Shown here in pieces: positions 6,317-61,946 of a stretch of 64,000 nucleotides of DNA. This stretch comes from Octopus sinensis. Taxonomy: Eukaryota. The stretch is from positions 159,154,001-159,218,000 of the forward strand of contig NC_042998.1 of the NCBI RefSeq assembly GCF_006345805.1, given 5' to 3'. Position numbers and translations under genes: made by a program. The stretch's first letter is position 1. Each line of letters opens with the position of its first letter. The notes under the pieces are model-generated. The model searched no databases and was not told the origin of the DNA. It worked only from the letters and a program-made list of their open reading frames with translations.

Positions 6317-7919
6317 GTAGCAGTAGTAGTAGTAGTAGTAGTAGTAGTGTAGTAGTAGTAGTGGTGGTGGCGGTGGTGGTGGTGGTGGTGGTGGTGGTGG
6401 TAGGAGTACTAAATAAAGAAATAGCGGGGGATAAGACATTTACACAGTAAAAGATGCAAATCCCAGCTACTTGTTGGGAATTGAAATTTACTGGAACTGT
6501 AAATGAATGAAGATGATATAAGGCATTTGTGTGCGTGTTTGAGAATATTTCATATGTTTTATTGTTGCTGTTGTCGCTGGTGTTGTTAATGGTTTGTGAT
6601 AAGGATTGTGACATAGGCAAAAATTAATCACATTTTAGCATCAGCATAGCGTTATGGTGAAAAGGAAGAAAGAGAAGAAGAAGAAGAAGAAGAAGAAGAA
6701 GAAGAAGAAGAAGAAGAAGAAGAAGAAGAAGAAGAAGAAGAAGAAGAAGAAGAAGAAGAAGAAGAAGAAGAAGAAGAAGAAGAAGGTAGTGGTTGCGGAG
6801 GGGTAGGGGTGAATGTTGTCAATGTTTATAGTATGAGAAGCAATAGGCAGCTCTGTCAAGTAGGTTTGTGAAATGATAGAACCTGTCATTTAAGCAAAAT
6901 TCGTAATATTATGTTAGGATTCAATCACGTCATAAAGCAGGGCTGATCGCTGTTTGATACGTGTACAGAGTATATTCTAGGTGTAATAGGGGAGATCTAC
7001 GTACCTAACAAAATTGGAAAATTCATAATAAGTATTAAGCTCATTAATGGATCATGTTTGAAAACTAATTCTTCTCAGTTTTTCTTATGAAATATTATGG
7101 CAGTTGTTTCCGAGTTATTCATTTTTTTTTCTTTTTGCCCATTTCACGATTTGTATCCTGAAGTGACATGGGGTGCAAGAGGATAGAATAGTTGCGCAAC
7201 ACAAATAAAATAAGGACAAGAACAAAAAAAAAACATTAGGGTAGATGTGTACACCAGGACAGATCGCATAGTGACTGTGTGCTGTAGTAAAAGAAAAAAA
7301 TTGTGGAAGCAAGAGAGAGAGACAGAAAGATATCCTCAAAAACCTACCGAATGTTCAGGATAGAATGGACTCAGCGAAAGGCAGCTAAGTCGCTAGTTGG
7401 TGATGTTAAACTACGTGAAGTATTAAGTCTACCACCCGAGAGGGCCACCGTGGAATTAGAACTCAGAACGCAATGACCCAATAAAGACGTTCTTAAAGTT
7501 CCGCCAATCCATCACTCTCGACCGGTACTTTTTTATCGGTCTAAAAAGAACGAGGAGCAAAGTCAACCGTGACAAGATTTGAACTCAAAGTGCTACAAAC
7601 TAAAGCAATCCCCGCCAGACATTCTATCCGGCATCCTAACAACTCCCCCAATTCGCTGCTTGAGGTGAGTTTGGACCATTAGGAGTAAGTGTTATGCATA
7701 AATTTTAATGAACTTATAAATTCCACTGGAATTACGAATAAAGATACTGAAATCACTACAACACGTAGTCTCTGATTCGGCCTAATACTGAGATTAACTA
7801 TACATGCATCCGTGGTATACTCAACTTCTTAAACGTTGATTCAAAGGGCAAATTGTTAAGTTGATTATCTGAATGGTCATCGTCAGAACTGACATATATA
7901 TAAATATATATATATATAG

Positions 7920-10867: not shown

Positions 10868-11950
10868 TCTTTATTACGATTATAAAATCAGTACATAGAA
10901 GAACAATACAGGACATACATACAAAAAAGAGTTAAGTGGTTCGTTTAAAAATTTCCAAAATATATGGATTATTCATTATACAAAAAACCGTATTTAAATT
11001 GTCCTTTGCATTGACTAATATAACATTACATTAGATTGAAATCTTACCGATATATTTTAAACCCCGGCAACTATTAGGCCCCGCAGCTTTCCTTTCCTCT
11101 TCTCCATCCATAGTTAAACTGGGTTCTGAACCCACCTTTTCGCATCTTCCTTCCATCTTTTTTCATACACACCTCGTGGTAAGGTCTCTTTTCCAGCCCA
11201 TTTTGCTCTTCAGATGATATCTGAAGTAGTGAGCAAGTGGGGCCTGAGACAAAGGATCCTATTGCGACTCCTCCATCTTGTACGCACATGCATTCTTTTA
11301 CTACTGCAACCGTGCAGTGAAAACATGCCTCACCTTCCTCGAGAGTCCAGTTGGCGGTATCATCTTAATCATAGACTCAGCCTACAGCTGTACTCGTCCC
11401 AGATGCGATTAACACGTGTTCTGCGTAACTTATCAAGTCTGACAACTGACGACAGTGTACAAAAGCGTGTGGACGTTTCATCGTCCAACCCGCATCTTGG
11501 ACATGTCGGTGGCACTGAAATTCCGTGCCGCGATAACTTCTCGCGAACAGGTAAAGCATTCCTATAACACTGCCAGGCCAGGGATCTTTGGAAATTATCC
11601 AAATACCCCGTCCTGAAAGTATTTTTAAACAGGTTGGTAAGCTGGTCTTCGTCGAACCCCAGAGCCCCTCCTAGGACGTCGTCGTTCTTTGCCTCTACCA
11701 ACCTGCTATAAAATACCGAGGTGGTATTTCCGCAGCCGGCCTTGCCTGCCTTGTGGATCAGCGTGAGTGCCTGTCGGCACTCCTTTTGCCATAAAGTCAG
11801 ATTCCGTCTTTTGATGCAACCGGGTTTAAAATTCACTAAGGAAGCCGGTCTCGAGAAAAGGATGGCCTCCCTTTGCAGATACTTCAAGGGCGCTGAAATG
11901 GTGTCTAAAGCCAACTGGAGACGACGATCTCCTGGGGCTATAGAGCTACA
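10868..11950 (-). pseudogene. Tx1/L1-clade LINE 3' fragment (zf-RVT zinc knuckle and 3' UTR)
   Basis: ORF 11369-11914: ...FQRSLAWQCYRNALPVREKLSRHGISVPPTCPRCGLDDETSTRFC...; minus-strand AATAAA near 10870. Confidence 0.8.
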
Positions 11951-12049
11951 GTAACACCCCCTCCCCTATGTGGTTAGCCATATCAAGATGGCTTCTATAC
12001 TTTACATTATCGAGCGATTACTGTTTACATCTCATTTTGAGATTTAATA

Positions 12050-13281
12050 ATTGATATAATTGTTTTAGATTACATAGGTTTTTAGCATGGACTTTCTTGG
12101 AAACATAATTCCACAATTCTCGATCGGATTCAGCTCCGGGTTCTGGGGAGGTCATTTGATTACGTCAATATTATGGTGATCAAAAAATTCCATACCCTAT
12201 TTGGCTTTGTGCACAGGACTATTGTTCTGCTGATAAATAGCCCCCGGAGGCATTTGGTGAGTCAAATATAGCACAACATTATCCTTTAGTAGATTCATAT
12301 AACCTACGCTATTTAGCTTTCCATCATCTTTAACTAGAGGGCCAACACCAAAGCTACTAAATGCCGCCCACACCATCACACCCCCAACATCGCTTGCGCC
12401 GTCTTTTTCACACATTTTGGATGGAAATCTTCGGTTGGGCTTCGTCTGACGTATGTTTTGTCATCTGATCAAAATATACAGAAGCGTGACTCGTTACTCC
12501 AAAGGACCCAGCACCAATCTTCGGCAGTCCGTTGGGCATGGTTTTTTTGCGAAATTAAGGCGTTTGAGTCGATTTCTCTCAGATACTGTTGGCTTTTTCC
12601 TAGCGATTCGTCCATGTAGTCCAAATTCTCTCAAACGGTTGCGGGTGGTTTGTGGTGTAAAGATGACACCATTCTCGTTGGACAATTGTTTACAAATGTC
12701 AACGGCTGTCAGCACTCAGTTACCTTCCGAAAGTCGGTGGATTCGACGGTCCAACTGCGCCGTCGTTTTTCTTGGGGCGCCAGTCCTTTGCCGATCTTTA
12801 TATTGACCAGTCTCCGAGTATAACTTTCACGCTTGCATGCAAGCCGTTTTACTGCACTTTAGTTGCTTGCTGATGTTCGAAAAGGAAACCTTTTGCTGGT
12901 GGAGTAATACCATTTTTGCTCTCGTGACTGGACTGAGGCTACGTTGTTTTCCCATTATTATTCAATTGTATAAGAACGTTAAATTATAAAACTATATAGA
13001 GCAGTTAGACTAGTTGTGTGACCACCCATTTTGGCAAATAAAATTGCATACATATTACATGGTTTTAAACTAATTTTGCCGGTAAATTTAAAACGTTTAT
13101 ATTAATTTAGCATTAAAATTCTTCAAGTTGTATAAAAATAGTTATTGTCAGCATCATTCGAAAGAGAAATAAATTCTGCATAAGGTGTAAAAGATAAAAA
13201 TAATTTGTATGGTGTCAGTAACAAAATATTTTGTAAGAAATAGAAGTTTTATCATTGGTTTTAATTTTATTTTCGCCAGTG
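12050..13281 (-). mobile_element. Decayed Tc1-like transposon
   Basis: ATG at 12955: MGKQRSLSPVTRAKMV...GAPRKTT...RNRLREFGLHGRIARKKP...VMVWAAFSSFGVGPLV...YQQNNSPVHKAK...SPEPGAES (PSPDLNPI-like). One end is visible as ...CAGTG|TA at 13281. Confidence 0.85.
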
Positions 13282-15089: not shown

Positions 15090-15570
15090 TCGGCTCAAAC
15101 AAAACTTTATTAATTGAAATAAACACCATCAGATTCAACACACTTTTTGCCAATACGAAACAAGTTTATTTATGCCAGTAGCATAACAATCCTGCATTCT
15201 GGTGGCGGTGAAGTCGTTGGAGGCGTGTTTGGTATCGTCTCGATTTTTGAAGCATTTCTCACGCAGGAAGTTGTCGAGATGCTTGAAAAAAGGGTAGTCG
15301 GTAATCAAGAGGTTTGGTGAGTATGGCGGATGAGGCAAAGTTTCATAGCTCAATTCGTTCAACTTCTGCAACGCTTATCACCGCTACGAAATTTCTTGAA
15401 CCACCATTGTGATGTACGTTCATTAGTGGTTCATTGGCCAAACGCGTCGCTGATATCGCGAACTATTTCAGCTGCTTTTCTGCCTAACTTGAACTGGAAT
15501 AAGAAAATTGTGCGAATTTGCTTTTTGTCCATGTTGTATTCAACGTTCCGGAAAAAATGGCCTAATTATT
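15090..15570 (-). mobile_element. Internally deleted mariner element
   Basis: ...TTNERTSQWWFKKFRSG joined to LQKLNELSYETLPHPPYSPNLLITDYPFFKHLDNFL (YSPDLAP-like motif). Confidence 0.8.
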
Positions 15571-15867: not shown

Positions 15868-16286
15868 CTCTCTTTTCTCTTTACTCTTTTACTTGTTTCA
15901 GTCATTTGACTGCGGCCATGCTGGAGCACCGCATTTAGTCGAGCAAATCGACCCCGGGACTTATTCTTTGTAAGCCCAGTACTTATTCTATCGGTCTCTT
16001 TTTTGCCGAACCGCTAAATAACGGGGACGTAAACACACCAGCATCGGTTGTCAAGCAATGCTAGGGGGACAAACACAGACACACAAACACACACACACAC
16101 ACATATATATATCTACATATATACAACAGGCTTCTTTCAGTTTCCGTCTACCAAATCCACTCACAAGGCTTTGGTCGGCCCGGGGCTATAGCAGAAGACA
16201 CTCGCCCAAGATGCCACGCGGTGGGACTGAACCCGGAACCATGTGGTTGGTTAGCAAGCTACTTACCACACAGCCACTCCTGCGCC
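15868..16286 (-). mobile_element. SINE family A
   Basis: Full-length, low divergence. Confidence 0.9.
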
Positions 16287-25844: not shown

Positions 25845-27180
25845 GTGAAGCCCAAGTCAGTTCCCTCGTTGATACGGTGTAGCAACGAGGTGCTGATATC
25901 AGAATGGAGTTCGGACTGAGAAAGTGTGGTGTGTTAGTCTTGAAGAGAGGCAAAATCAAATTTATGGACGGAAGTTATGAAGCAGATAGTACTTGGAGAT
26001 TTGGAAAATGGATAAATTGATGGAGAAAGAAATGACAGAAAAATTTAAGGTAGAGTACTTGCGCAGACTGAGACTGATCCTGAAGTCGAAATTAAGTGAA
26101 CAGAATGCTGGATCATAGATATAGCATGCCCAGCTAACTAGATGTGGAACACTCCACCCAAAAAGTGACACAGACAGACTGTATGTACCAAGAAAAAGAG
26201 GACTTATTGGATGCGAGCACAGCATTAGAGCAGAAGAAAACAATATAGCATGGTATGTAAAAAATGTCACAGAACTGCTGTTATTAGAAATAGGAAGGTC
26301 AGGCTTGTGTAGGAGGAAAGACTGCAAAGATAAAGCACTATACAAGAAATTGAAAACAAATGAAACTGAAATTAGGTGTGTAAAGAAAAGAATGCATGGG
26401 ATGTTGAAGATAAGAAAGAGAAAAAAAGATGGCTGTGGATGACTAAAAGTGATTTAAAACCGGAAACAGAGACTCTTGCAAGCACTAAGAACAAACTGCA
26501 TAAAATACAGAAGAGACAACACAGCAGAAAGTGTTAAGTGCAGAATCTGTAGACAAAACGGTGAACCAATAGGGCATATTACCAGCCAATGTTCGTCACT
26601 AGTCCAGAAGGAATATAAAAGACGCCACAATATAGCCAGGCTTGTCCATTGGACATTCTGCAACAATTATGGACTTGACAGAGCAAAAAATTGGTACGAC
26701 AAACCTGAAGGCATCGTCGAAAATAGAAATGCAAAGATCCTATGGGATTTTATGATTTAGTGCGACCATGAGATACAGAACAGGAAACCGGACATTGTCT
26801 TAATTGGGAAAGAAAACAAACTATGCTGGATCATAGATATAGCATGCCCAGCTGACAACAAGGTATGCGATAAGGAAGAAAGAAAAGTTGAGAGATATGT
26901 CAGGTTAGCTTGGGAAGTTAAGCAGTTGTGGTCAATGAAAAAGATAGCAGTAGAACCAATAATTGTCGGAGCCCTGGGAACAGTGAGCAAAAATCTCGAG
27001 AAGTACGTGGAACAAATGGGGGCTGCAATAAGGGGAAAACATTTGCAGAAAACAGCACTGCTTGGAACCGCTCGAGTACTCCGGAAGGTGCTAAAAAATT
27101 AGAGGTGTTACCTTAGTTCACTGGTAGTGAACAGCTGACACTGTAGTACATCTCCAGCATTAGAAGCTGTGCAAAGGTAA
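25845..27180 (+). pseudogene. R4/Dong-like RLE-type non-LTR retrotransposon, 3' half (family 1)
   Basis: DIRMEFGLRKCGVLVLKRGK...KCRICRQNGEPIGHITSQC...KILWDFMI*CDHEIQNRKPDIVL...IIDIACPADNKV...PIIVGALG...LQKTALLGTARVLRKVL, then 3' UTR and (TAA)n. Confidence 0.88.
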
Positions 27181-27264
27181 TAATAATAATGATGATAATG
27201 AAGATAATAATAATAAGAAGAAGAAGAAGAAAAAGAAGAAGAAGAAGAAGAAGAAGAAGAAGAA

Positions 27265-27295
<31 letters not shown>

Positions 27296-27352
27296 AAGAA
27301 GAAGAAGAAGAAGAAGAAGAAGAAGAAGAAGAAGAAGGAGAAGAAGAAGAAG

Positions 27353-27943
27353 GAATATATTCACAGACATGACAGAGTTGGAACCTACATACATTGGAAG
27401 CTATGCCAACATTATGGAATAACAACAGAAAAAAGATGGTATAGGCACGCACCAGAAAAGGTCACAGAAAACGAGAAAGCAACCATACTCTGGGATATGC
27501 CGATACACACAGATAGAGAAATTAAGGCCAACAGACCAGATATAGTTGTCAGAGATCACGAAGAAAAAAAATGCTTTCTAATTGATGTATCAATACCGGA
27601 AGATGACAACGTGTCTCTAAAAGAAATGGAGAAACTCTCAAAATACAAAGACCTGGAAATAGAGGTAACTAGAATGTGGAATCTGAAAACAGAAACAATT
27701 CCTATCATAGTAGGTGCATTAGGTATGATAAAAAATATTCAGACAAATACATAACAAAAACACCAGGACTTACAAACACATATAACATACAGAAAATTGC
27801 ACTACTAGGCACTGCACACATCCTACGCAGAACCTTTTCCATACAATAACCATCAGAGCATCACAACAAATCACAGCACATACCCAAAGCACACAGAGCT
27901 GCGCTCGGTAGTGAAGTGAAAGCACGCTATAAAAATAAAACTA

Positions 27944-31271: not shown

Positions 31272-31659
31272 CGCACAGGGGTAGCTGTGTAATAAGAAGT
31301 TTAATCCCTGACTACACGGTTCCAGGATCAATTCTACTGCGTAGCACCCTTGGCCGGTTTCTTCTACTATAGCCTCGGACCAACCGAAGCCCTGTGAGTG
31401 GATTTCGCAGACGGAAACTGTTCGTTGTGTGTGTGTGTGTGTGTTGGGGGGTGTTTTTGTTTGTCCTCCACTACCACTTGGCAACCAATTTTGGTTTGTG
31501 TACATCCCAACAATCTCGCATTTCAGCAAAAAAGACCGATAGAATAACTACCAGACTTAAAATCTAAGTGCTAGTGTCGATTTATTTGACTAAAACCCTC
31601 CAAGGCGGTGCCCCAGTATGGCCGCAGTCCAATAGCTGAAACAAGTAAAAGATAAAAGA
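31272..31659 (+). mobile_element. SINE family A (diverged)
   Basis: Same modular layout. Confidence 0.85.
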
Positions 31660-32306: not shown

Positions 32307-32355
<49 letters not shown>

Positions 32356-32359
32356 TTTT

Positions 32360-32560
32360 ACTTGTTACAGTTATTAGACTGCATCCATCTTTGGGCTACG
32401 CTTTAAATATTTTTAGTCGAATAGACCGACCACATTATTTATTTATATTTTAAGCCTAGTACTTATTCTACAGGACCCTTTTGCCGAACCGCTAAGTTGC
32501 GGAGACGGAAACACCTGTTGTCAAGCAGTGGTGGAGGACAAACACAGACAAAAGGACATA
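32360..32560 (-). mobile_element. SINE family A, 3' half
   Basis: ttttgccgaaccgctaag...ttgtcaagc segment. Confidence 0.75.
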
Positions 32561-32599
32561 CATACACCCCACCCCAGACACACATATATGCATGCATGC

Positions 32600-32651
<52 letters not shown>

Positions 32652-32906
32652 CAAATTGAGATAGGGGTTGTAAATGCAACCCTCCATGGGATAACATATA
32701 TCCAATATACTCCTAGTGAAGTACCCAACAAAGTTAATACATAAATGTTAATGATTGCAATGCAATCAATTCATTTACTGTATTATATGGGCAAAGGTAA
32801 AATGATTTACCACAAATTACTAATACAAGATAAGAAAATGGAGAAATACATCTAAATCAAATATCAAATATCAAATATCAATTACCAGATAATACTCAAA
32901 CACATA

Positions 32907-32978
<72 letters not shown>

Positions 32979-33189
32979 CAATAAGAAAATGGAAGGGATC
33001 AATAGGTGGTATTCATCAACTTTTAGACATTATGTTATGTTATTTCAATTTATTTATTAATTCACAAAAGGACAATTATAACAATAATAACAATATACAT
33101 ACATGCATAACATATTATGCTTTACATGTATAATATATAAAGATATCATTAATTATTAAAATATAACATACAGAAATAGAAATTGAGAT

Positions 33190-33313
33190 ATCTTACAGCT
33201 GTTTCAGCCAAGAGGGAAAAATACCTCACTTTACCTTTATCACTCCAGTGGACTGAAGTAATTAGTACATGAAATTGAGGTGCTTGGGTGTTTCTCTAGG
33301 CTTCGTCAGAGAT
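33190..33313 (-). ncRNA. Type I hammerhead ribozyme with a large helix II insertion (left arm of fold-back)
   Basis: Minus strand: atct-CTGACGA-agcctagag...(~80 nt)...ctcttggct-GAAA-C-AGCT-G-TA-agat. Helix I 4 bp, helix II 8 of 9 bp, palindromic loop III ACAGCTGT. Confidence 0.75.
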
Positions 33314-33343
33314 TTTTTTTAATTCTGCAATCAATAAAAAAAA

Positions 33344-33457
33344 ATCTCTCACGAAGCCTAGAGAAACACCTAAGTACCTCAATTTCTACTTCAGTCCACT
33401 GAAGTGATAAAGGTAGAATGAGGTATTTTTCCCTCTTAGCTGAAACAGCAGTAAGAT
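33344..33457 (+). ncRNA. Degenerate copy of the same hammerhead (right arm)
   Basis: atct-CTCACGA (G5 to C)-agcctagag...ctcttagct-GAAA-cagcag-TA-agat. Confidence 0.6.
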
Positions 33458-33843
33458 ATTATCCCAATTTCTCTTCCTATATGTTATATTTTACTAATTA
33501 ATGATATCTTCATATATTATATATGTAAAGCATAATATGTTATACCTGAATGTATTTTGTTATTATTATTATAATTATCCTTTTGTAAATTAATAAATAA
33601 ATTGACATAACATAATATGTCTAAAAGTTGATGAATACCACCTATTGATCCCCTCCATTTTCTTATTGCTCTATAAATTAATGATAAATTAACTTTTTAG
33701 CCTCACCCATTTATTACACTCGGTGATATAATTGCCATGCAATAAAAAAACATTGGTGTGTTAATAATCGGGTATTCTACCAGCAGTATATTGGATAGAT
33801 ATTATCCCTTAGTTGGTTGGTTTCACAACCTCTAACTTTCTTG

Positions 33844-33877
<34 letters not shown>

Positions 33878-35279
33878 GACGGGCTTCTTTCAGTGGGACT
33901 GAACCCGAAACCTCGTGGTAGGGATACAAACGTCTTGCAACACAGCTACACACACACACACATACATACATACATGCATGCATACATACATACATACATA
34001 CATACATACATACATACATACATGCATACACACATACACACATACACACATACATACATACATACATACATACATACATACATACATACATACATACATA
34101 CATACATACATACATACATACATACATACATACGTACGTATGTACCTGTGCATGTTCCTTTCTGTTTTTTCCTATTAGCATTTCTCCTTTGAATAAGGAA
34201 CTGGTTTCTAACAAAGAAACTAGCTCCTTCCTCGTTGGAATGTAGGTTATGAAAAGACTGTTACATTTTAAACCTGAGAAAAGTTTTGCATAGTTTTACT
34301 GTTCTGTTTGCAGATTGTATTTGTAATGTGTGAGTCAGTGGTTGATTTCTTTTTCTGAAAGTCCAAGCTTACAGACTGACAGTTAACGCATTTACACGTA
34401 TGTATGTATGTATGTATGTATGTATGTATGTATGTATGTATGTATGGATGGATGGATAGATGGATGGATGGATGGATGGATGGATAGATGGATGGAGGGA
34501 GGTACGTACTTATGTATGTATGTATGTATGTAAATATGTATATACACGCATCCAAGTGACAGGGGACACAGAGGAGAACGTAGGTAAATAATAGGTAAAT
34601 AACTTGACAGACAGACAGATAGAAAGACAGACAGACAGATAGATAGATAGATAAATAGATAGATAGATAGATAGAAAGAAAGAAAGAAAGAAAGAAAGGT
34701 GTGAAGAAACAGGGATAAAAGGAAATAGATGACTATAACAGGTGTGTGAGTGTGTGTGTGCGTGTGTGCGTGTTATACACACAAAGGAGCAGGCTAACAA
34801 ACACAGAGATAAAAGCCAGGCAGGCAATATAATTTATCTAGTGAATATTTATCTGCAGCTTTATTTATTTCCTGTCAGCACAAATGGAAGCTGATCTTTT
34901 ATGTAGTGAAATTATTAATGACAAATGTGAAGCATGTTCATACTTGCCTTGGATTTGTATTGACACAAATCAGTAATTTATAGCTGACCTGAATATTCAG
35001 AGTAATAGAGTCAAGCTGTTGGACTTAATACTTTATTACTTATAACAGACACAACTTAATGAATAGTTGTTTTCATTTTTGTTGATGTTGTTGATGTGGT
35101 GGTGGTGGTGGTATTAGTGGTGATGGTAGTGATGGTGGCAGTGGTGGAAGTTGTTTGGAGAGCGGGGAGGGTAATGGGTTTTTTGTTGTTGTTTATTTCC
35201 AAGTCATCCTTCATGGAGTAGACGTATGATTAAAAAGCGTTCCAGCGATAGTCAGCTCTATCTTTATTGAGACATAATA

Positions 35280-43150: not shown

Positions 43151-43575
43151 GCCGCAAGCATGGCTTTGTGCTATGACGTTCCGGGTTCAGTCCCACTGAG
43201 TGACAACTTGGATAACATCTTCTACTATAGCCCTTAGCCGACTGGAGCTTTTTGAGTGGATTTAGTAGAGAGAAACTGAAAGAATCCCGTCGTTTATGTG
43301 TGTGTGTGTATGTGTGTGTGCACGCGTGAGCGACGGGTGCGTATATCTACATGTTGGTGTCTTTGTGTTTGCGTTTGTCCACCACCACCCCTTGATATCC
43401 AATGTTGGTTTTTTTACATCATCGTTATCTAGCAGTTCGACAAAAGACACCGTTACAATACATATCAGGCCACAAACAAAATAAGCATTGGCGTTGATTT
43501 GTTCGGCTAAGCCCTTCAAGGCAAGTGCTCCAGGATAGCCGCAGTCTAATAACTGAAATAACCAAAATATAAAAG
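43150..43575 (+). mobile_element. SINE family A (diverged)
   Basis: Same modular layout. Confidence 0.8.
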
Positions 43576-51765: not shown

Positions 51766-51821
51766 CCAATAATTTCAACATCACCACCAACTTCAATATC
51801 GCCAAAATTACTGTCAAGAAT

Positions 51822-52430
51822 GGCTTCAAATTTTTGGCATAAGGCCAGCAAGTTTGAGAGAGGGGTAAGTTGATTACGCTGATCCCGAGTCCTGAACTGG
51901 TACTTATTTCATTGACCCCAAAAGGATGAAAGCAAAGTTGACAGGTAGAATTCGAACTCAGAACGCAAAGACGGGAGAAATGCTGCTAAGTATTTTGCCC
52001 GGCGTGCTAACAATGCTACCAGCTCGCCGCCTTTTCCTTTACAATCAATATTTCTTTGGCGGTGAGTCGGCAGAATCGTTAGCACGCTAGACAAAATGCT
52101 TAGCAGCATTTCGTTCGTTTTTCCGTTCTGAGTTCAAATCCCTCCGAGGTTAGCTTTGCCTTTAATCCCTTTCGTGGTTGATAGAATAAGTACTAGTTAA
52201 GCACTGTGGTCAATCAAATCGACTTGGTTCCACTCCCGAAAGTGCTGACCTGGAGCCAAAATTTGAAACTAGTATTAACATTTCCTTAAAGTGGTGAGCT
52301 GGCATAACAGTTAGCACGCCGGACAAAATGCTTAGTGCCATTTCGTCCACCTTTACGTTCTAAGTTCAAATTAACCCTTCAGATAAAATTTCCGGCCTTA
52401 TGCCAAAATTTGAAACCAATATTACAGTTA
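51822..52430. mobile_element. Head-to-head SINE family B copies (- at 51822-52030; + at 52055-52430)
   Basis: ccagctcgccgcc...(~26 nt)...ggcggtgagtcggcag. Confidence 0.85.
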
Positions 52431-53319: not shown

Positions 53320-53673
53320 TAACTATTAGACATTGTTTTCCTTATTTCTTCCTTCTGTTTTGCATATGCGAATTGCAGGGATATGTCATATGTGGAGTCT
53401 CATTTGTAGAAAATAGAAATAAACAGTCTTTGAGTGCTATTTCTAATCTTTCGGTATGTGGCTACGCAACCTGTTGCCTGCCTCTCTTATGTATATACAA
53501 ATATATATATATATATATATTTAATTTTATTTGTTAGGGAATAAAAATTCCGGTATAACAGGGGTTCAAATTATTCTCAATGAGAAAATATATATTTTCA
53601 TTTAGAGATAGTAGGCCCCTTCATCTCACCATATAACAGAAATTTAATTTAAATACTTACTACTGTATAACTT

Positions 53674-53768
53674 GGCTACACGCGTTTCATGGGGTACATT
53701 TCCCGGTTCCTTAACCACGCCGTATTTTGCTGGAACCATTCATAAAATATAACCCCAATCATCAGGCC
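53674..53768 (-). ncRNA. Type I hammerhead in the 3' pLTR, with extended helix II
   Basis: Minus strand: ggc-CTGATGA-ttggggttatatttt...ggttcc...ggaacc...gaaatgtaccccat-GAAA-C-GCGT-G-TA-gcc. Confidence 0.75.
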
Positions 53769-54569
53769 CCTATCTCACTTTTTCATAGTTTGATACTATA
53801 AACCATATTTTAATTTTTTGAACAAATAAGTATGTGTAAAATAGGTTCACCGTAAAACCCATAATTTAATTCAAATAAAAAGTTACAAAAATAAAAATAA
53901 AAACTTACAAAAATAAAACTTACAGAAATAAAATGAAAAATAAAGATGAAAATAAAAAATACGAATAAAAATAAAAATTTACAAAAACTATGTTCTTACG
54001 TAACTTATGCCTATAAATATGAAATTAATAATATATAGGGTTAAAAATAAATATATATACTTGTGATGATATAAAATGATATAAAATGAAAGGAATGGCA
54101 AAAATATATTCGAATAAAAATGGAAGCAATGACGAATAAATATTTTCGAATAAAAACTATAGTACGAATGACGAAATGCAAAATTTACAAATGATACGAA
54201 TGATAATAATTAAAAATTTACAAAGTAAAAATAACTTAAGGGTAACGTAAAGGAGTATATACAAATCACTGTTGACTCCATTGTCCTCCTACGTCTTAAT
54301 TACGGCTTGACATCGCAAGGTCCAGCGAACTGCACACACACCTCCTTCCTGCTTCTTTTAAACTATTACTAAATTAACATATTATCTTAATAGTAAACAT
54401 AGTCCACGAAAATACAAAAAAGTATCCTGGGAACATTACTTTTTTTATTTCGTATTATTCTGCATTATTCCCACCCTTTAATCACTCACACCGCACTGCT
54501 ATTCCTCCCCACATCTAATGGTAAGTTAATTTAACCTAGTAGTTTCATATTAAATAATAATAGTATTAA

Positions 54570-55620
54570 TAATACTTACGCTTAAATTTAGGATTAGGCG
54601 TTATTAATTAGGCATTTCAGTCTATGTTTACATTTAATTTTTCTTTCCTCCTGAGCATAATAAATGATTCTATTGTATTAGTGATATCTTTAATAATATT
54701 AACTTTAACTTGAGTACCATATGAGACTATCAACCATATAATTTTATTATTATTTTTATTTATATTTATATTATTAATCTCCATATCTTTATTTACACAA
54801 GTTTTATCCATAATGTCTCCATGAATTCATAGGTACATAACAAACATGACCTATTTCCAATTCTATACGATTTCGCTTTACATATTATCTCCCACTTTAA
54901 TTCATAATTGATTTCTTTCGACTTTAAACTCCAAACGTATTTACTTAGTCCTGTCGAATTCCTAAGTTTTACATGAAATCAAGTGCTGTTCTATTCGTTG
55001 TTTCATTTTGTCGAACCTATATACGTTCTATCTGGATAATTTCCAATATCCGGATTATTTATTCCACAATTTTCATTTCTATCTACTTTTACAGAAACTA
55101 CACATGTATATACTACATCACTAACATTACATCTTCCTTTATGTTACATTGGTTTTTATCTCTACAGTTACAACTATTACAGTCTCCAGCACTCCTATTC
55201 AGATGCTTATTTAATTTATTATAATAATATTTATTCAGCCCATACTTACTTATTGATGAAATAATATTCCCTACATTGTTAGTAGTTGACTACCCCACTC
55301 CTATATTATTTTTAGAGAATATTTCGATATATTTCTTATTTTCCATAATAAATGATTCTATTGTATTAGTGATATCTTTAATAATATTAATTTTAACTTG
55401 AGTACCATATGGGACTATCAACCATATAATTTTATTATTATTTTTATTTATGTTTATATTATTAATCCCCATATCTTTATTTACACAAGTCTTGTTATTC
55501 TCTTCTATATTATTTAAAGTATTGTATCCATTATGATTTTCTTTTAATTTTAAATCCTTCCCCATTAAACTCAACCTATCCATATACTTTATACCATTTA
55601 TATTTTTCCTGTTTTTTTAT
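54570..55620 (-). pseudogene. PLE ORF C-terminus: post-RT linker plus GIY-YIG endonuclease with Cys motifs, broken by stops and frameshifts
   Basis: Hand translation: KIIWLIVPYGTQVKINIIKD...IEIFSKNNIGVG*STTNNVGNIISS...CNCRDKNQC/GRCNVSDVVYTCVV...RTYIGSTK/MKQRIEQH...STGLSKYVWSLKSKEINYELKWEIICKAKSYRIGNRSCLLC. This matches the PLE pattern IIWFNPPF...SYSCMxN...CNCR...VVY...YIG...T-LSKY-W-LK...W-I...C-LC. Confidence 0.85.
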
Positions 55621-55997
55621 CATCTTGAATTCCATAGCATTACGGTGTGTTATCCTATTATTACTATTATAATATTATTTTCATTTTATATCATTTTATA
55701 TCATCACAAGTATATATTTTTATTTTTAACCCTACATATTATTAATTTCATATTTATAGGCATAAGTTACGTAAGAACATAGTTTTTGTAAATTTTTATT
55801 TTTATTCGTATTTTTTATTTTTATTTTTATTTGTCATTTTATTTTTGTAAGATTTCATTTTTTATTTTTGTAACTTTTTATTTGAATTAAATCATGGCTT
55901 GTACAGTAGGGTCCGGCGAACCTATTTTACAAATACTTATTTGTTTAAAAAATTAAAATATAGTTTATAGTATCAAACTATGAGAAAGTGAGATAGG

Positions 55998-56092
55998 GGC
56001 CTGATGATTGGGGTTATATTTTATGAATGGTTCCAGCAAAACACAGCGTGGTTAAGGAACCGGGAAATGTACCTCATTAAACATGTGTAGCC
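55998..56092 (+). ncRNA. Degenerate hammerhead in the inverted pLTR
   Basis: ggc-CTGATGA...acctcat-TAAA (G12 to T)-C-ATGT-G-TA-gcc. Confidence 0.6.
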
Positions 56093-56524
56093 AAGTTATA
56101 AAGTAGTAAGTATTTAAATTAAATTTCTGTTATATGGTGAGATGAAGGGGCCTACTATCTCTAAATGAATATATATATATTTGACGTCTATATCTAGCAT
56201 GTTGACTGTCCACCTTTTCGTGTTCAGTCCTTAATTGGTATATATAAATATTTTAATCTTCGGATTCTTTTTAATGTGCTAGACCACTGGTTTTAATTGA
56301 CTAATATCAATTTCTACCCTTAATTTTTAAATATGAAATATATGTTCTCAAACCGATAAATTGACTGCTGCTAATTTATTAACTGCAGGCTAGTTTTTCG
56401 ATTATCAGCGCGCCAAAAGTAGAGGCATTCGAAAGATACATCCGAACGTAATAGGTTGTACTTTTTGCATGCGGGACTCCGGTACCGTTTTTCATCTAGT
56501 ACAGCATATTATGCTCATAACAAA

Positions 56525-56584
56525 CTACGCTGATGAAGTTACAGATATCCTTGTGATATTAATAGCTGAAACTGCAGTACGTAG
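56525..56584 (+). ncRNA. Type I hammerhead ribozyme, array unit 1
   Basis: ctacg-CTGATGA-agttacagatatc cttgt gatattaatagct-GAAA-C-TGCA-G-TA-cgtag. Helix I ctacg/cgtag, intact core, helix II agtta/tagct plus gatatc/gatatt, minimal helix III with palindrome ACTGCAGT, GUA cleavage site after 56579. Confidence 0.9.
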
Positions 56585-57031
56585 GTAATTATTCCATTTA
56601 TTATTTTTCTTTTGTCTCATCCATTGCTTTAGGTCGTGCTGAATTTTATTTTTATTTGAGAACAAAATCTTTGTGGAGAATGGCGATTTGACGTCTATAT
56701 CTAGCATGTTGACTGTCCACCTTTTCGTGTTCAGTCCTTAATTGGTATATATAAATATTTTAATCTTCGGATTCTTTTTAATGTGCTAGACCACTGGTTT
56801 TAATTGACTAATATCAATTTCTACCCTTAATTTTTAAATATGAAATATATGTTCTCAAACCGATAAATTGACTGCTGCTAATTTATTAACTGCAGGCTAG
56901 TTTTTCGATTATCAGCGCGCCAAAAGTAGAGGCATTCGAAAGATACATCCGAACGTAATAGGTTGTACTTTTTGCATGCGGGAATCCGGTACCGTTTTTC
57001 ATCTAGTACAGCATATTATGCTCATAACAAA

Positions 57032-57091
57032 CTACGCTGATGAAGTTACAGATATCCTTGTGATATTAATAGCTGAAACTGCAGTACGTAG
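57032..57091 (+). ncRNA. Type I hammerhead ribozyme, array unit 2
   Basis: Identical to unit 1; predicted cleavage after 57086. Confidence 0.9.
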
Positions 57092-57538
57092 GTAATTATT
57101 CCATTTATTATTTTTCTTTTGTCTCATCCATTGCTTTAGGTCGTGCTGAATTTTATTTTTATTTGAGAACAAAATCTTTGTGGAGAATGGCGATTTGACG
57201 TCTATATCTAGCATGTTGACTGTCCACCTTTTCGTGTTCAGTCCTTAATTGGTATATATAAATATTTTAATCTTCGGATTCTTTTTAATGTGCTAGACCA
57301 CTGGTTTTAATTGACTAATATCAATTTCTACCCTTAATTTTTAAATATGAAATATATGTTCTCAAACCGATAAATTGACTGCTGCTAATTTATTAACTGC
57401 AGGCTAGTTTTTCGATTATCAGCGCGCCAAAAGTAGAGGCATTCGAAAGATACATCCGAACGTAATAGGTTGTACTTTTTGCATGCGGGACTCCGGTACC
57501 GTTTTTCATCTAGTACAGCATATTATGCTCATAACAAA

Positions 57539-57598
57539 CTACGCTGATGAAGTTACAGATATCCTTGTGATATTAATAGCTGAAACTGCAGTACGTAG
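57539..57598 (+). ncRNA. Type I hammerhead ribozyme, array unit 3
   Basis: Identical to unit 1; predicted cleavage after 57593. Confidence 0.9.
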
Positions 57599-57757
57599 GT
57601 AATTATTCCATTTATTATTTTTCTTTTGTCTCATCCATTGCTTTAGGTCGTGCTGAATTTTATTTTTATTTGAGAACAAAATCTTTGTGGAGAATGGCGA
57701 TTTGACGTCTATATCTAGCATGTTGACTGTCCACTTTTTCGTGTTCAGTCCTTAATT

Positions 57758-57818
<61 letters not shown>

Positions 57819-57843: not shown

Positions 57844-58697
57844 CGTGGTGCATTCCGGAATTACTGACACGTCTTTAGGAGAGGCAGTTATAACTGTCCT
57901 ACATTACTGTAATTTTAGTCTATCATTACTATACATCTAATAAGCTGACTTTCCAACTATTATCATTCCAGATTGAAGGTGACGGATGTCACAGCAATGT
58001 GAATACACCCTACTAAACACCGCTAGTCACACCTGACTAATTTGCACAATGCACTCGGGACATGGGATCATTTGGAAGGTCACTATTCAATACTATTTTG
58101 TATTAAAATGAGTAACATCACTACGAAAGCGTATGAAATGCTCTAGACTACTTATGAGAGAACTTGAGTGAGTCGAGAATCTGTTTTTTGTTGCCACAAA
58201 ATGCCAGGCAAAGCAAAGTCCACCGGGAAGCTCTTGATTTGATTTGATAAGAAGGGCATCATCTACATCTATTGAATTCCTCCCGGTCAAACAGTCAACA
58301 AAGAGTACTTTGTGGAGGTTTTGAGAGAATTCAGGAAAATAATTCGCCGCAAAAAGGCAGAGCAGTTGCACCAGGACAATGCACAAGTACAAAATTTCAT
58401 CCGGGTAACCAACTACTTGACAGAACTGGACATCAAAAATGTCCCTCAATCTTCCTGCAGTTCGAACTTTGCTCCGTCTGACTTTTGCTTGCTAAAGGAG
58501 ATGAAGGAGGATGTGGCAAGAGTCCTGGAAACACATCTTCACTTTGGAGGGAATTCCATGGAGCCTTCATGAAGTGGCAGGATTGCCACAACAAGTACAT
58601 TGAAGTTAGAGGATCCTACTTTGAAAGAGATTAGAGTTTTGTACTTTTAAATTTATTTGAAAAGGCTAAACTAAACACTTAGGGAGTGCACCTTCAG
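57844..58697 (+). mobile_element. Internally deleted mariner element with degenerate TIRs and TA flanks
   Basis: TA-CGTGGTGCATTCC...GGAGTGCACCTTCAG-TA; FDKKGII...PPGQTVNKEYFVEVL...LHQDNA...SSNFAPSDFCL. Confidence 0.8.
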
Positions 58698-59118: not shown

Positions 59119-59235
59119 AAGCGGGGTGCTGAAAATGTCCTGACTTTAAGGGTGTCGCGAAAGGTCTGGTTCGAGGCACAAACTTCCGAGTTCTTTTACT
59201 GTGCTCAGAAAAACTGAAGGACTGTTGCAATAAAA
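59119..59235 (+). mobile_element. Mariner-derived MITE end fragment
   Basis: GCGGGGTGCTGAAAATGTCCTGAC TIR-like start. Confidence 0.4.
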
Positions 59236-59289
59236 CACTTGTCACTAAAGAATATTACAGCCGAATAAAGAACATTTGGATCTCAGAAC

Positions 59290-59985
59290 TCTCTGCATTC
59301 AATAAAACAGTGGCCAACAACGTGTTTGTAGTGCCAGTACTCATACCAACGTTTAGGCTGCTTGACTGGACGCTTGATGAGATCCGATACATTGATGTGA
59401 AAACCCGAAAAATACTAACAAGCACACATAATTTTCACATAAACAGTGACGTAGACCGCCTCCACCTCAACCTAAACAAGGCGGCAGAGGCTTAACATCG
59501 ATCCAAAATGCCTTTGAATGTTGCATCATATCCCTTCGGCAACATCTTTTAACTACCAAGCGTCGAAGTGCATCCCTTGAACAAGTTTGCATACATGAGG
59601 CTGATAACATCATAACACTTGCTAGACAACTCCTTGAGCAACACTCTTGGTCTGATAACCTAGAATATATGCCCAAAGAAGTCGCACGACTCTACCGCAA
59701 TGTATCATCAGATGGAAGGATAAGCCTATATGAGCAGAAGACTATGCATAGATATGTTAGTAGAAAGCTCCGTGATGATAGTAACATTGATCATCAAAGC
59801 AGTCAATCATGGACCAATAACCGGATTACTACCAAACACTTTGAAGGGTATGCGTTTGTATTCCAAGAACAAGGAATATCGGCCAAGTACCTGATGCACA
59901 AAAGGGACAGAGATGCGAGAGAAGCCGTAAAATTTGAAGGCTAAAACAATGCGAAGCGCATGTGACCAGCGATGTGTAGCCTGGT
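59290..59985 (+). pseudogene. R4/Dong-like LINE fragment (post-RT region)
   Basis: AVPVLIPTFRLLDWTLDEIRYIDVKTRKILT...FHINSDVDRLHL...GGRGL...FEGYAFVFQEQGISAKYL. Confidence 0.75.
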
Positions 59986-60933: not shown

Positions 60934-61600
60934 CAATGGTTCTCAACTAGGGTCCATATGATCCTTGGGGTTCATTTAACATTTTGTTGTTAAAAATTGG
61001 GGGTAAAAATTGGTTATATTTCTAAAATACACAAAATATTTTAATAACTTCTTAATACAATAACTTCTTAATACAGGAGTGGCTGAGTGGTAAGTAGCTT
61101 GCTAACCAACCACATGGTTCCGGGTTCAGTCCCACTGCGTGGCACCTTGGGCAAGTGTTTTCTGCTATAGCCCCGGCCGACCAATGCCTTGTGAGTGGAT
61201 TTGGCAGACGGAAACTGAAAGAAGCCTGTCATATATATGTATATATATATATATATAAGTATGTGTGTTTGTGTGTCTGTGTTTGTCCCCCTAGCATTGC
61301 TTGACAACCGATGCTGGTGTGTTTACGTCCCCGTCACTTAGCGGTTCGGCAAAAGAGACCGATAGAATAAGTACTGGGCTTACAAAGAATAAGTCCCGGG
61401 GTCGATTTGCTAGACTAAAGGCGGTGCTCCAGCATGGCCGCAGTCAAATGACTGAAACAAGTAAAAGAGTAAAAGAGTAAAAGAGTACTATTCAGTTATA
61501 AAACTATAATAATTTTTTTAACATCTAAGGCTATGGGGTCCGCTAGAGTAAAATGGGGATCAAAAGGGTCCATAGGTAAAAAAGTGGTTGGGAACCACAG
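60934..61600. mobile_element. Charlie/hAT-like MITE interrupted by a SINE
   Basis: Ends CAATGGTTCTCAAC and GTTGGGAACCACAG with GGGTCC subterminal motifs; TSD not convincing. Confidence 0.6.
61075..61487 (+). mobile_element. SINE family A (young), inside the hAT MITE
   Basis: Full-length with (GTAAAAGA)n tail. Confidence 0.9.
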
Positions 61601-61946
61601 ATGTACACCGTGTATGTATGTATGTATGTCATTATTCAGTTTATTTCAAAATTTCTTACCAATAGAGAAAGAACCGATTTCTAACCTAGATCCAAGGTCC
61701 CTTCATTGGCATTTCAACATTAACGACAGGGTATTTTTGTATGTATGCATTTATATATATATATATGCATGTATGTATACATGTATGTATGTGCAGATTT
61801 GTATGTTTTATGTATATATTCTCATGCATATAGTTACATATATAGACATGCTCATATATATTCAAATGATAAACTTCTAGGAAGTTTTACAGATTTTTAC
61901 TGTTCCAGTGATGGATTGGATCTGTAGTCTTCGATTATTTGTCCAA

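What the first reader, a model, noticed from the sequence alone, without database searches (positions are those of the whole stretch)
32975..33672. 700-bp fold-back built from two head-to-head hammerhead units
Seen: a near-perfect ~345-bp-arm palindrome with a ~15-nt spacer. It would normally be called a MITE, but each arm contains an HHR reading outward from the centre (left arm core intact). Inference: this is a PLE pLTR-type RNA whose cDNA snapped back at its 5' end, or a self-contained non-autonomous ribozyme fold-back element. A read-through transcript would be a long dsRNA hairpin in which pairing of the arms competes with ribozyme folding.
Basis: partly seen in the sequence, partly recalled or inferred. 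Interest (0 to 1): 0.82.

Follow-up and report, generated by a model that had tools for sequence, protein, structure and literature searches.

The report
Head-to-head hammerhead retroelement fold-back, octopus
This is a real 700-bp palindrome in an octopus-type genome, made of two inverted copies of a small hammerhead-ribozyme-carrying retroelement unit; Penelope-like retroelements are already known to leave this insertion scar, so it is a tidy example and not a new kind of element.

Summary
Arms 32975-33324 and 33333-33672 are 92% identical around an 8-nt loop. The left arm (minus strand, 33315-33188) carries a complete type-I hammerhead motif. It has core CUGACGA...GAAA, a 97-nt helix II, a 1-bp helix III inside the 8-nt palindrome ACAGCUGU, a GUA cleavage triplet, and helix I paired at 5 of 6 positions. 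The right-arm copy is broken (G5 to C and two more hits). Such a motif is expected 0.02 times per shuffled window.

The palindrome is larger than reported. More eroded outer arms (about 70% identity) extend it to 32619-33876, and both ends sit in (TA)n. A 138-nt block bracketed by a 13-nt direct repeat interrupts the left arm.

The window is octopod: a Penelope-like endonuclease remnant is 86% identical to an Octopus vulgaris protein. A 20-kb O. vulgaris locus holds a second, independent head-to-head fold-back with a related, compact hammerhead.

Head-to-head inverted copies with palindromic junctions, (TA)n targets and paired hammerheads on opposite strands are published features of Penelope-like elements. 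My best reading is an old, decaying inverted dimer of a non-autonomous ribozyme retroelement. I found no evidence that it functions now. Copy number and family structure could not be tested.

The parts
32619..32650 (.). (TA)n microsatellite at the outer end of the left side of the extended palindrome
32651..32829 (-). Outer left arm; inverted repeat of 33673-33844 at about 65-72% identity
   Evidence: blastn E = 1e-15
32830..32842 (+). First copy of the 13-nt direct repeat ATAAGAAAATGGA; TSD-like bracket of a secondary insertion
32843..32980 (.). 138-nt block that interrupts the left arm: unique sequence, (AAATATC)3 and the compound microsatellite (CT)n(AT)n(AG)n at 32907-32978. Probably a later TSD-flanked insertion
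   Evidence: it has no homology to the arms and no other copy in the data held
32981..32993 (+). Second copy of the 13-nt direct repeat, lying inside the inner left arm
32975..33324 (-). Inner left arm (350 bp), one ribozyme unit read from the centre outward on the minus strand; 28% G+C
33188..33315 (-). Intact type-I hammerhead motif. Helix I 33315-33310 / 33193-33188; CUGACGA 33309-33303; helix II 33302-33206; GAAA 33205-33202; helix III with GUA 33201-33194; predicted cleavage after 33194
33325..33332 (.). Unpaired centre (CTGCAATC), set in an A/T-rich junction
33333..33672 (+). Inner right arm (340 bp), the same unit read outward on the plus strand
33342..33459 (+). Decayed hammerhead copy: CUCACGA 33348-33354 (G5 to C), C.A mismatch at the base of helix II, GAAAC-AGCA-GUA 33442-33453 (loop no longer palindromic), 10-nt deletion in helix II, 3-nt insertion in helix I
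33673..33844 (+). Outer right arm, continuous with the inner right arm
33845..33876 (.). (TA)n microsatellite at the outer end of the right side

Best explanation
The feature is an old, inactive insertion of a small non-coding retroelement unit that carries a type-I hammerhead ribozyme. The unit belongs to the class called non-LTR retrozymes, or pLTR-derived elements of Penelope-like retrotransposons. It is present as a head-to-head inverted dimer inside a (TA)n microsatellite of an octopod genome.

Each arm is one copy read outward from the centre: about 16 nt of A-rich leader, the ribozyme (about 116 nt, because helix II is a 97-nt hairpin), then about 400 nt of AT-rich tail that ends at (TA)n.

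Shown here: the palindrome; the ribozyme motif and its decay in one arm; the (TA)n ends; the octopod origin; a second, independent head-to-head case in O. vulgaris.

Inferred: the inverted dimer arose during Penelope-type integration. One route is that both strands of the cut target primed cDNA synthesis and the two cDNAs were joined at the RNA's 5' end. The other is that the cDNA primed on itself. In the source element the ribozyme would process multimeric transcripts as a dimer: its helix III is only 1 bp plus A15.1-U16.1, but ACAGCUGU is an 8-nt palindrome that can pair between two copies. In this fold-back only one sense copy exists per transcript, and arm-to-arm pairing wins, so the ribozyme is very unlikely to act here.

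Later history, also inferred: a TSD-flanked 138-nt insertion entered the left arm. The inner 345 bp was either re-homogenised between the arms or represents a younger nested event.
For: Ribozyme motif:
- The full hammerhead descriptor hits this site against 0.02 expected per shuffled window. In addition, loop 3 together with its closing pairs is a perfect 8-nt palindrome, which the descriptor did not require.
- The same architecture occurs in three identical copies of a 507-bp tandem array 23 kb away: CUGAnGA, N10.1, G10.2...C11.2, U11.1, GAAAC, palindromic tetraloop, GUA (56530, 57037, 57544).
- It also occurs in both arms of an independent fold-back in O. vulgaris (L001:6648-7260).
- Among these three lineages, pair 10.3-11.3 is C-G, G-C or U.G. 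Pair 10.4-11.4 is C-G, G-C or U-A. Helix I is A-U/G-C/A-U versus C-G/G-C/U-A. Loop 3 is AGCU versus UGCA, still palindromic (read).

Genome context:
- The outer ends lie in (TA)n. So do the ends of the tandem array and of the 2.6-kb inverted repeat at 53585-56181.
- A PLE endonuclease remnant at 62137-62772(-) is 86% identical to an O. vulgaris protein. PLE copies in L001, L002, L008 and L009 carry a minimal hammerhead just downstream of the endonuclease, and in L008 and L009 an RVT_1 ORF lies upstream.

Literature:
- Head-to-head inverted pLTRs with palindromic junctions, and the self-priming model: PMC3846280.
- Inverted 5'-truncated copies and (TA)n targets: PMC8557442.
- Paired hammerheads on opposite strands 100-700 bp apart, and dimer-type helix III: PMC4209133.
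- The PLE enzyme cleaves and extends both target strands: PMC11167929.
- Type-I hammerheads with a 1-bp helix III and palindromic tetraloop, and a U.U pair at the base of helix II, in retrozymes: PMC7229834.
- Retrozymes derive from pLTRs: bioRxiv 10.64898/2026.07.22.740005.
Against: - No second copy of the arm was found, whether single, tandem or palindromic. I searched the 64-kb window and about 107 kb of cephalopod loci, so family membership is not shown.
- The arms have no similarity to any PLE copy sampled. The PLE hammerhead subtype differs, and no RT/EN ORF is adjacent.
- The 10.1-11.1 pair is A-U, not the usual G-C. Helix II is unusually long. Helix I is weak. The ribozyme-compatible fold is 5 kcal/mol above the MFE.
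- No Rfam hammerhead model matches, even at E <= 10. The models also miss the tandem-array hammerhead and the compact O. vulgaris one, so this negative says little.
- Substitutions between the arms are no rarer in the ribozyme (8 in 128 nt) than outside it (18 in 209 nt).
- No TSD can be read, because (TA)n sits on both sides.
- The sharp step from about 70% to about 92% arm identity is not explained by a single integration event.
Confidence: 0.6

Rival explanations
1. DNA-level inverted duplication. A single retrozyme or pLTR copy, already sitting in the (TA)n tract, was turned into a palindrome by fold-back repair or replication template switching. Retrotransposition chemistry played no part. 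A second such event, or arm-to-arm gene conversion, refreshed the inner 345 bp.
For: - Arm identity has two tiers, about 70% outer and about 92% inner, with a sharp step. That implies at least two events at the DNA level.
- The step coincides with a heterology (the 138-nt block), as expected for a conversion tract that stops where homology stops.
- AT-rich microsatellites and palindromes are prone to hairpin-induced breaks (general knowledge).
Against: - The same head-to-head arrangement recurs at an unrelated O. vulgaris locus with a related hammerhead.
- Head-to-head is the arrangement reported as typical of PLE insertions (PMC3846280, PMC8557442).
- Both sides of the extended palindrome end at (TA)n, as expected if a whole inverted dimer was inserted into one microsatellite.
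Confidence: 0.2
2. A cut-and-paste fold-back or MITE-type DNA transposon, with very long terminal inverted repeats and a TA target. The hammerhead-like motif would be fortuitous or a captured fragment.
For: - The whole element is an inverted repeat with a short loop.
- The (TA)n on both sides could hide a TA target-site duplication.
- Tc1/mariner transposase remnants are present in the window (12200-12460, 15138-15374, 58276-58569; identified by eye only).
Against: - No recognisable transposase-family terminal motif, no readable TSD, and no other copy was found.
- A complete hammerhead by chance is expected about 0.02 times per window before the palindromic loop 3 is counted.
- The same ribozyme type in the same outward orientation occurs in an independent fold-back whose arms are otherwise unrelated. 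A MITE family would not predict that.
Confidence: 0.1
3. A self-contained, still mobile family of palindromic ribozyme elements. The fold-back itself would be the transposing unit, for example as a hairpin RNA that primes its own reverse transcription or feeds small-RNA or ADAR pathways.
For: - Two independent head-to-head hammerhead fold-backs were found in only about 84 kb of Octopus DNA (window plus L001).
- One arm in each keeps a consensus core.
- Left-arm G versus right-arm A outnumbers the reverse 8 to 1 (p = 0.04, uncorrected). RNA editing of one template is one possible cause.
Against: - Arms are 8% (this locus) and about 20% (L001) diverged, with inactivating core changes in one arm each, as expected for dead copies.
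- There is no sign of selection on the ribozyme.
- The two fold-backs share only the ribozyme core, not their arms or their centre.
- No further copy appeared in the data available.
Confidence: 0.08

Closest known systems
Inverted (head-to-head) pLTR structures of Penelope-like elements (Arkhipova et al. 2013, PMC3846280; Craig et al. 2021, PMC8557442)
   Same: - Two copies of the 3'-terminal, hammerhead-bearing part of the element lie in inverted orientation with their 5' ends at the junction.
- The junction is palindromic with a short or no spacer.
- Insertion is into AT-rich simple repeats, (TA)n.
- Decay and 5' truncation are common.
   Different: - No RT/GIY-YIG ORF or direct pLTR accompanies the inverted pair.
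- The arms match none of the PLE copies sampled.
- The hammerhead is the classical type-I form with a palindromic loop 3, not the minimal PLE form found next to cephalopod PLE endonuclease genes here.
Metazoan non-LTR retrozymes: tandem repeats with type-I hammerheads (Cervera & de la Pena 2020, PMC7229834; Li et al. 2026 preprint, 10.64898/2026.07.22.740005)
   Same: - Type-I hammerhead with a 1-bp helix III and palindromic tetraloop (dimer-type).
- Weak base of helix II.
- Non-coding AT-rich unit of a few hundred bp: 28% G+C, a full arm of about 520 bp against 507 bp for the tandem array in the same window.
   Different: - The arrangement is inverted, not head-to-tail. The two ribozymes are never on one RNA strand, so they cannot form the cis dimer or release a unit-length or circular RNA.
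- Helix II is far longer (97 nt) than described.
Paired minimal hammerheads on opposite strands in Schistosoma mansoni (Cervera & de la Pena 2014, PMC4209133)
   Same: Two hammerhead motifs 100-700 bp apart on opposite strands. Here the two cleavage-site positions are about 260 bp apart.
   Different: The paper mentions them in one sentence, with no analysis of orientation or of any palindrome. The hammerhead subtype and the phylum also differ.
Foldback elements and long-TIR MITEs (DNA transposons)
   Same: The element is almost entirely an inverted repeat with a short loop, is non-coding and is AT-rich.
   Different: No TSD, no family-specific termini and no related transposase were found. 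The arms carry an oriented ribozyme motif that is shared with tandem and other fold-back loci.

Membership tests
Hammerhead ribozyme (type I) | Conserved core C3 U4 G5 A6 N7 G8 A9 ... G12 A13 A14 A15.1 ... U16.1 H17 | tested here: met
   Left arm: CUGACGA ... GAAA ... GUA, at 33309-33194(-). The right arm fails, reading CUCACGA (G5 to C).
Hammerhead ribozyme (type I) | Three helices around the core, with helix I open | tested here: met
   Helix II: AGCC/GGCU plus UAGAG/CUCUU, closing a 97-nt hairpin. Helix III: A-U and C-G with loop AGCU. Helix I: 5 of 6 pairs. The constrained fold is -25.7 kcal/mol against an MFE of -30.9.
Hammerhead ribozyme (type I) | G10.1-C11.1 pair at the base of helix II | tested here: not met
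   The pair is A10.1-U11.1 here and in the tandem-array hammerhead, and U.U in the O. vulgaris fold-back. A U.U base is reported for axolotl HHR_Amex2 (PMC7229834).
Hammerhead ribozyme (type I) | Match to a curated covariance model (Rfam hammerhead families) | tested here: inconclusive
   No hit at gathering score or at E <= 10. The models also miss the tandem-array hammerhead and the compact O. vulgaris one.
Hammerhead ribozyme (type I) | Covariation that preserves the helices among relatives | tested here: met
   Three lineages were compared: this fold-back, L001:6648-7260 and the 507-bp array. Pairs 10.3-11.3, 10.4-11.4, 1.1-2.1 and 1.3-2.3, and the outer loop-3 positions, change on both sides and stay paired or palindromic. 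The sample is small, and homology outside the core is not shown.
Hammerhead ribozyme (type I) | Site-specific self-cleavage | not testable with these tools
   Needs in vitro transcription of the unit as a monomer and as a tandem dimer.
Penelope-like element, inverted pLTR structure | Head-to-head inverted copies with a palindromic junction | tested here: met
   Both units read outward from an 8-nt centre.
Penelope-like element, inverted pLTR structure | Arms homologous to the terminal repeat of a PLE that encodes RT and a GIY-YIG endonuclease | tested here: not met
   blastn of the arms found no match in the window's PLE remnant (61000-62800) or in PLE loci L001, L002 and L006-L009. Only six copies could be sampled.
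Penelope-like element, inverted pLTR structure | Adjacent PLE ORF | tested here: not met
   No ORF longer than 51 codons in any frame of 32976-33672. The nearest PLE remnant is 28 kb away.
Penelope-like element, inverted pLTR structure | Insertion into AT-rich simple repeats; variable or absent TSD; optional 30-40-bp tail | tested here: inconclusive
   Both outer ends lie in (TA)n, which fits the reported target preference. The same (TA)n hides any TSD or tail.
Metazoan non-LTR retrozyme | Head-to-tail tandem repeats, each with a type-I hammerhead | tested here: not met
   The two units are inverted and there is no tandem copy. A true tandem array of another family is at 56179-57772.
Metazoan non-LTR retrozyme | Short, non-coding, low-GC unit expressed as linear or circular RNA | tested here: inconclusive
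   Size (about 345 bp core, about 520 bp full arm) and 28% G+C fit. Expression cannot be tested.
MITE / Foldback DNA transposon | Target-site duplication and family-specific termini shared by many copies | tested here: inconclusive
   No direct repeat flanks either the core or the extended palindrome, apart from (TA)n itself. No other copy was available.

The most novel reading that the evidence does not exclude
Octopus genomes harbour a family of palindromic ribozyme retroelements in which the fold-back itself is the replicating unit. Its hairpin transcript would serve as a self-priming template and as a substrate for the very active cephalopod ADAR or small-RNA machinery. The 8-to-1 excess of G in one arm over A in the other would then be a fossil of A-to-I editing of one template.
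Probability: 0.07. Interest if true: 0.7.

Novelty: new member of a known kind. Interest (0 to 1): 0.3.

Why it matters
This locus is a clean, minimal example of the head-to-head insertion structure of ribozyme-bearing retroelements. It consists only of the two ribozyme units, a few bases of loop and (TA)n ends. It comes from cephalopods, where hammerhead elements have apparently not been described: my literature searches found no such report.

It could help decide how Penelope-type integration produces inverted copies, by self-priming or by priming on both target strands. The centre of the palindrome marks the 5' end of the template, and here that end lies about 130 nt upstream of the ribozyme cleavage site. 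The template was therefore not an RNA cleaved at this ribozyme.

The locus also shows that Rfam's hammerhead models miss this class of dimer-type motif. It does not point to a new mechanism or a host function.

Tried and rejected
- Rfam. Gathering thresholds over the whole window gave nothing. At E <= 10 over the locus, only generic miRNA-precursor hairpin hits appeared, caused by the palindrome and the compound microsatellite. Focused scans of the left unit, of the tandem-array hammerhead and of the O. vulgaris hammerhead found no hammerhead family. The negative is therefore uninformative.
- Exact-pattern scans of public DNA collections. A 20-mer from helix II found nothing in metagenome, prokaryote-genome or viral contigs. 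A degenerate 22-mer across GAAAC...GUA found three metagenome contigs, which are chance matches inside mariner-like sequence, and nothing viral.
- Protein-level search for other copies. I concatenated the six-frame peptides of the fold-back and searched the protein collection: no hit at E <= 10.
- Exact look-up of ten window ORFs, to find the source contig or an orthologous locus: none is in the collection.
- A LINE fragment used as bait for more O. vulgaris loci: no hits.
- Four more PLE-bearing loci from ENA assembly ERZ21867824, added to L002, which I already held from that assembly. They share no megablast-level repeats with the window, so they come from a more distant cephalopod. They contain no type-I hammerhead fold-back.
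- Pfam on the PLE endonuclease remnants: not recognised. The PLE assignment rests on the GIY-YIG-type motif read by eye, the RVT_1 ORFs upstream in L008 and L009, and the minimal hammerhead downstream.
- An early idea that (CT)n was the 3' tail of the left arm. I rejected it once the 13-nt direct repeat showed that the microsatellite belongs to a secondary insertion.
- The idea that 32843-32902 is the remnant of an older left arm. It has no significant similarity to the arms.
- The hammerhead-like cores in the 2.6-kb inverted repeat (53765(-), 56001(+)). They fail the helix III and helix I tests and their local fold is unremarkable, so I did not count them as ribozymes.
- MAFFT alignment of the five hammerheads misplaced the 5' core because of the long helix II. 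I built no covariance model and read the pairs directly from the sequences.
- The bacterial promoter/terminator scan is irrelevant to a eukaryotic locus.

Full report
**Observation**

The palindrome is real. The left arm 32975-33324 aligns with the reverse complement of 33333-33672, with 312 matches, 25 mismatches and four indels of 1, 2, 3 and 10 nt. K2P distance is 0.082. The unpaired centre is 8 nt (33325-33332). A read-through RNA folds into one hairpin of -462.6 kcal/mol, against -135 for shuffles (z = -62). The 8% divergence and the arm-specific indels exclude a read or assembly artefact. No other copy of the arm exists in the window.

**The ribozyme motif**

On the minus strand of the left arm the sequence reads aaaaucucu-CUGACGA-AGCC...(97 nt)...GGCU-GAAAC-AGCU-GUA/agauau (33315-33188). 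Cleavage is predicted after 33194. Helix II folds on its own into a long imperfect hairpin (-26.3 kcal/mol).

Helix III is only A15.1-U16.1 plus C-G, closed by AGCU. Together these form the perfect 8-nt palindrome ACAGCUGU. That is the design of the classical metazoan type-I hammerheads, which work as dimers (PMC4209133; PMC7229834).

A descriptor that requires the core, at least 4 bp in helix II, a short closed helix III, UH, and helix I with at least 5 of 6 pairs finds four sites in the window. Dinucleotide shuffles give 0.02 sites. The other three sites are the identical hammerheads of a 507-bp tandem array at 56179-57772.

The right-arm copy reads CUCACGA, has a C.A mismatch at the base of helix II, and has loop AGCA. 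It is dead.

The ribozyme-compatible fold of the left unit is 5 kcal/mol above its MFE. Rfam gives no hammerhead hit for this motif, but it also gives none for the tandem-array hammerhead or for a compact relative. That negative carries no weight.

Weak points of the motif are A10.1-U11.1 in place of G-C, a very long helix II, and a weak helix I.

**The palindrome is larger than reported**

The flanks 32619-32829 and 33673-33876 are also inverted repeats of each other, at 65-72% identity (blastn E = 1e-15). Both end outward in (TA)n.

On the right, the outer arm continues the inner arm without a break. On the left, a 138-nt block (32843-32980) interrupts. It contains (AAATATC)3 and the compound microsatellite (CT)n(AT)n(AG)n, and it is bracketed by the 13-nt direct repeat ATAAGAAAATGGA (32830-32842 and 32981-32993). 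It looks like a later TSD-flanked insertion.

With the block removed, the two sides align collinearly over about 555 nt. Identity steps sharply from about 0.7 to about 0.92 exactly at the block. I cannot decide between two readings:
- arm-to-arm conversion that stopped at the heterology;
- a younger inner fold-back nested in an older one.

The 60 unique nucleotides of the block are not a diverged copy of the arm. The full arm, about 520 nt without (TA)n, is the size of the tandem unit (507 bp) and of the arms of another inverted repeat in the window (503-517 bp, 53585-54091 and 55679-56181).

**Whose genome**

The window is 64% A+T and full of microsatellites, with no long ORFs. A degenerate reading frame at 62137-62772(-) carries a GIY-YIG-type motif (CMYSILCSCGRLYKGET...EEH). 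It finds proteins at up to 86% identity, and the best named one is from Octopus vulgaris. Only the O. vulgaris locus shares megablast-level repeats with the window (93-94%).

Pfam does not recognise these endonuclease fragments. In related loci, however, an RVT_1 ORF lies just upstream (L008, L009). A minimal hammerhead, CUGAnGA-a-GGCYRG...YYRGCC-GAAAC-GU, lies 150-400 nt downstream (L001, L002, L008, L009). That is the Penelope-like element (PLE) signature of PMC4209133. The window's own copy of this minimal hammerhead is decayed, with GAAA changed to AAAA (61986-61951(-)).

**A second, independent case**

The 20-kb O. vulgaris locus was fetched for a different reason. It contains a 613-bp fold-back (L001:6648-6920 and 6989-7260, arms about 80-88% identical). 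Each arm again carries an outward-reading type-I hammerhead.

The left arm reads ccaucu-CUGAUGA-U-GGGACAUC-UUUU-AUAUCCC-U-GAAAC-AGCU-GUA/agac. The right arm has CUGAUGG. It shares GAAACAGCUGUAAGA and the helix I start with the window's motif, but it has a compact helix II. The arms are otherwise unrelated.

Three lineages can be compared: this fold-back, the L001 fold-back and the tandem array. Helix II pairs 10.3-11.3 and 10.4-11.4, helix I pairs 1.1-2.1 and 1.3-2.3, and the outer loop-3 positions all change on both sides while staying paired or palindromic. This supports a genuine hammerhead family and shows that the head-to-head arrangement recurs.

The other self-palindromes in the window are of a different kind. 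One is two inverted SINE copies (51812-52280). The other is a small repeat around a microsatellite.

**What it is and how it arose**

All three hammerhead-associated structures in the window end in (TA)n. They are this fold-back, the 2.6-kb inverted repeat and the tandem array.

The literature describes the same features for PLEs:
- partial tandems, an inverted 5'-truncated copy next to the 5' end, and a (TA)n target preference (PMC8557442);
- abundant inverted-repeat structures with palindromes at the junction, mostly head-to-head, interpreted as self-priming (PMC3846280);
- pLTRs that suffice in cis for mobilisation in trans (same paper);
- a PLE protein that cleaves and extends both target strands in vitro (PMC11167929);
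- paired hammerheads on opposite strands 100-700 bp apart (PMC4209133);
- non-LTR retrozymes as pLTR derivatives (preprint 10.64898/2026.07.22.740005).

The most economical reading is a non-autonomous hammerhead unit copied by PLE machinery into a (TA)n tract as a head-to-head dimer, and decaying since then.

The centre of the palindrome lies about 130 nt upstream of the cleavage site. The template was therefore not an RNA cleaved at this ribozyme.

Substitutions between the arms are as frequent inside the ribozyme (8 in 128 nt) as outside it (18 in 209 nt). Nothing suggests selection after the duplication.

**Limits**

I could not search any eukaryotic genome at the DNA level. All indirect routes failed. 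Copy number, family structure, TSD, the empty site and expression all remain untested.

The arms match none of the six PLE copies I could sample, and their hammerhead subtype differs. 'PLE-mobilised' is therefore an inference from architecture and target. It is not a demonstrated homology.

A DNA-level inverted duplication remains a serious rival, because the two-tier identity requires at least one DNA-level event. A long-TIR DNA transposon with a TA target cannot be formally excluded.

**Verdict**

It is a new member, in cephalopods and with an unusually long helix II, of a known kind of structure.

Noticed in passing
window 56179-57772 (+): A tandem array of 3.14 units of 507 bp, 99.8-100% identical to each other. 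Each unit carries a complete type-I hammerhead (CUGAUGA-AGUUA...UAGCU-GAAAC-UGCA-GUA/cguagg; cores at 56530, 57037, 57544). The array is flanked by (TA)n on both sides. It looks like a young non-LTR retrozyme array. Rfam does not detect it.
   Followed up: partly
window 53585-54091 and 55679-56181: Inverted repeat with arms of 503-517 bp (90% identity) around 1.6 kb of unrelated AT-rich sequence that contains a 150-bp internal direct repeat (54656-54805 and 55344-55493). It is flanked by (TA)n and abuts the tandem array. Each arm has an outward-reading CUGAUGA...GAAA core (53765(-), 56001(+)) that fails the helix III and helix I criteria. It may be captured DNA between inverted terminal repeats.
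   Followed up: partly
L001:6648-7260 (O. vulgaris OX597819.1, about 12.040 Mb): An independent head-to-head fold-back, with 273-nt arms and a 68-nt spacer. Each arm has a compact type-I hammerhead; the left one is intact and the right one has A9 changed to G. Its outer ends abut (GT)n on the left and CA-rich sequence on the right.
   Followed up: yes
window 32830-32993: A 138-nt block bracketed by the 13-nt direct repeat ATAAGAAAATGGA, inside the left arm. It carries the palindromic compound microsatellite (CT)n(AT)n(AG)n, the only one of that form in the window.
   Followed up: partly
window 32975-33672: The left arm has G where the right arm has A at 8 sites, against 1 site the other way (binomial p = 0.04, uncorrected). 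Seven of the eight have a 5' U or A. This could be GC-to-AT decay in one arm or a trace of A-to-I editing of one template. It is too weak to interpret.
   Followed up: partly
window 61951-62772 (-): A frameshifted Penelope-like endonuclease remnant (62137-62772), followed by a tRNA-like stretch (GAGTTCGATTCC; ARAGORN calls no tRNA) and a decayed minimal hammerhead (61986-61951, GAAA changed to AAAA). Intact versions of that hammerhead lie downstream of the endonuclease remnant in L008 and L009, and in an adjacent inverted copy in L001; the L002 copy has G at the cleavage position (H17).
   Followed up: partly
window 1815-2209, 2838-3243, 15880-16279, 31311-31659, 32355-32565, 33851-33894, 43178-43575, 61077-61477, 63565-63965: A repeat of about 400 bp, nine full or partial copies at 66-95% identity, also present in the O. 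vulgaris locus at 93-94%. Copies usually sit next to microsatellites. It contains a tRNA-like B-box-type segment and is probably a SINE. One fragment lies immediately right of the fold-back's (TA)n.
   Followed up: partly
window 51812-52280: Two copies of a different tRNA-like repeat in head-to-head orientation (69% identity). This shows that inverted pairs of common repeats also arise in this genome without ribozymes.
   Followed up: no
window 11372-11965 (-), 12200-12460 (-), 15138-15374 (-), 26476-27754 (+), 58276-58569 (+), 59133-59941 (+): Degenerate remnants of LINE-type reverse transcriptases (zf-RVT hit, E = 1e-5, just below the Pfam cut-off) and of Tc1/mariner transposases (recognised by eye only).
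   Followed up: no
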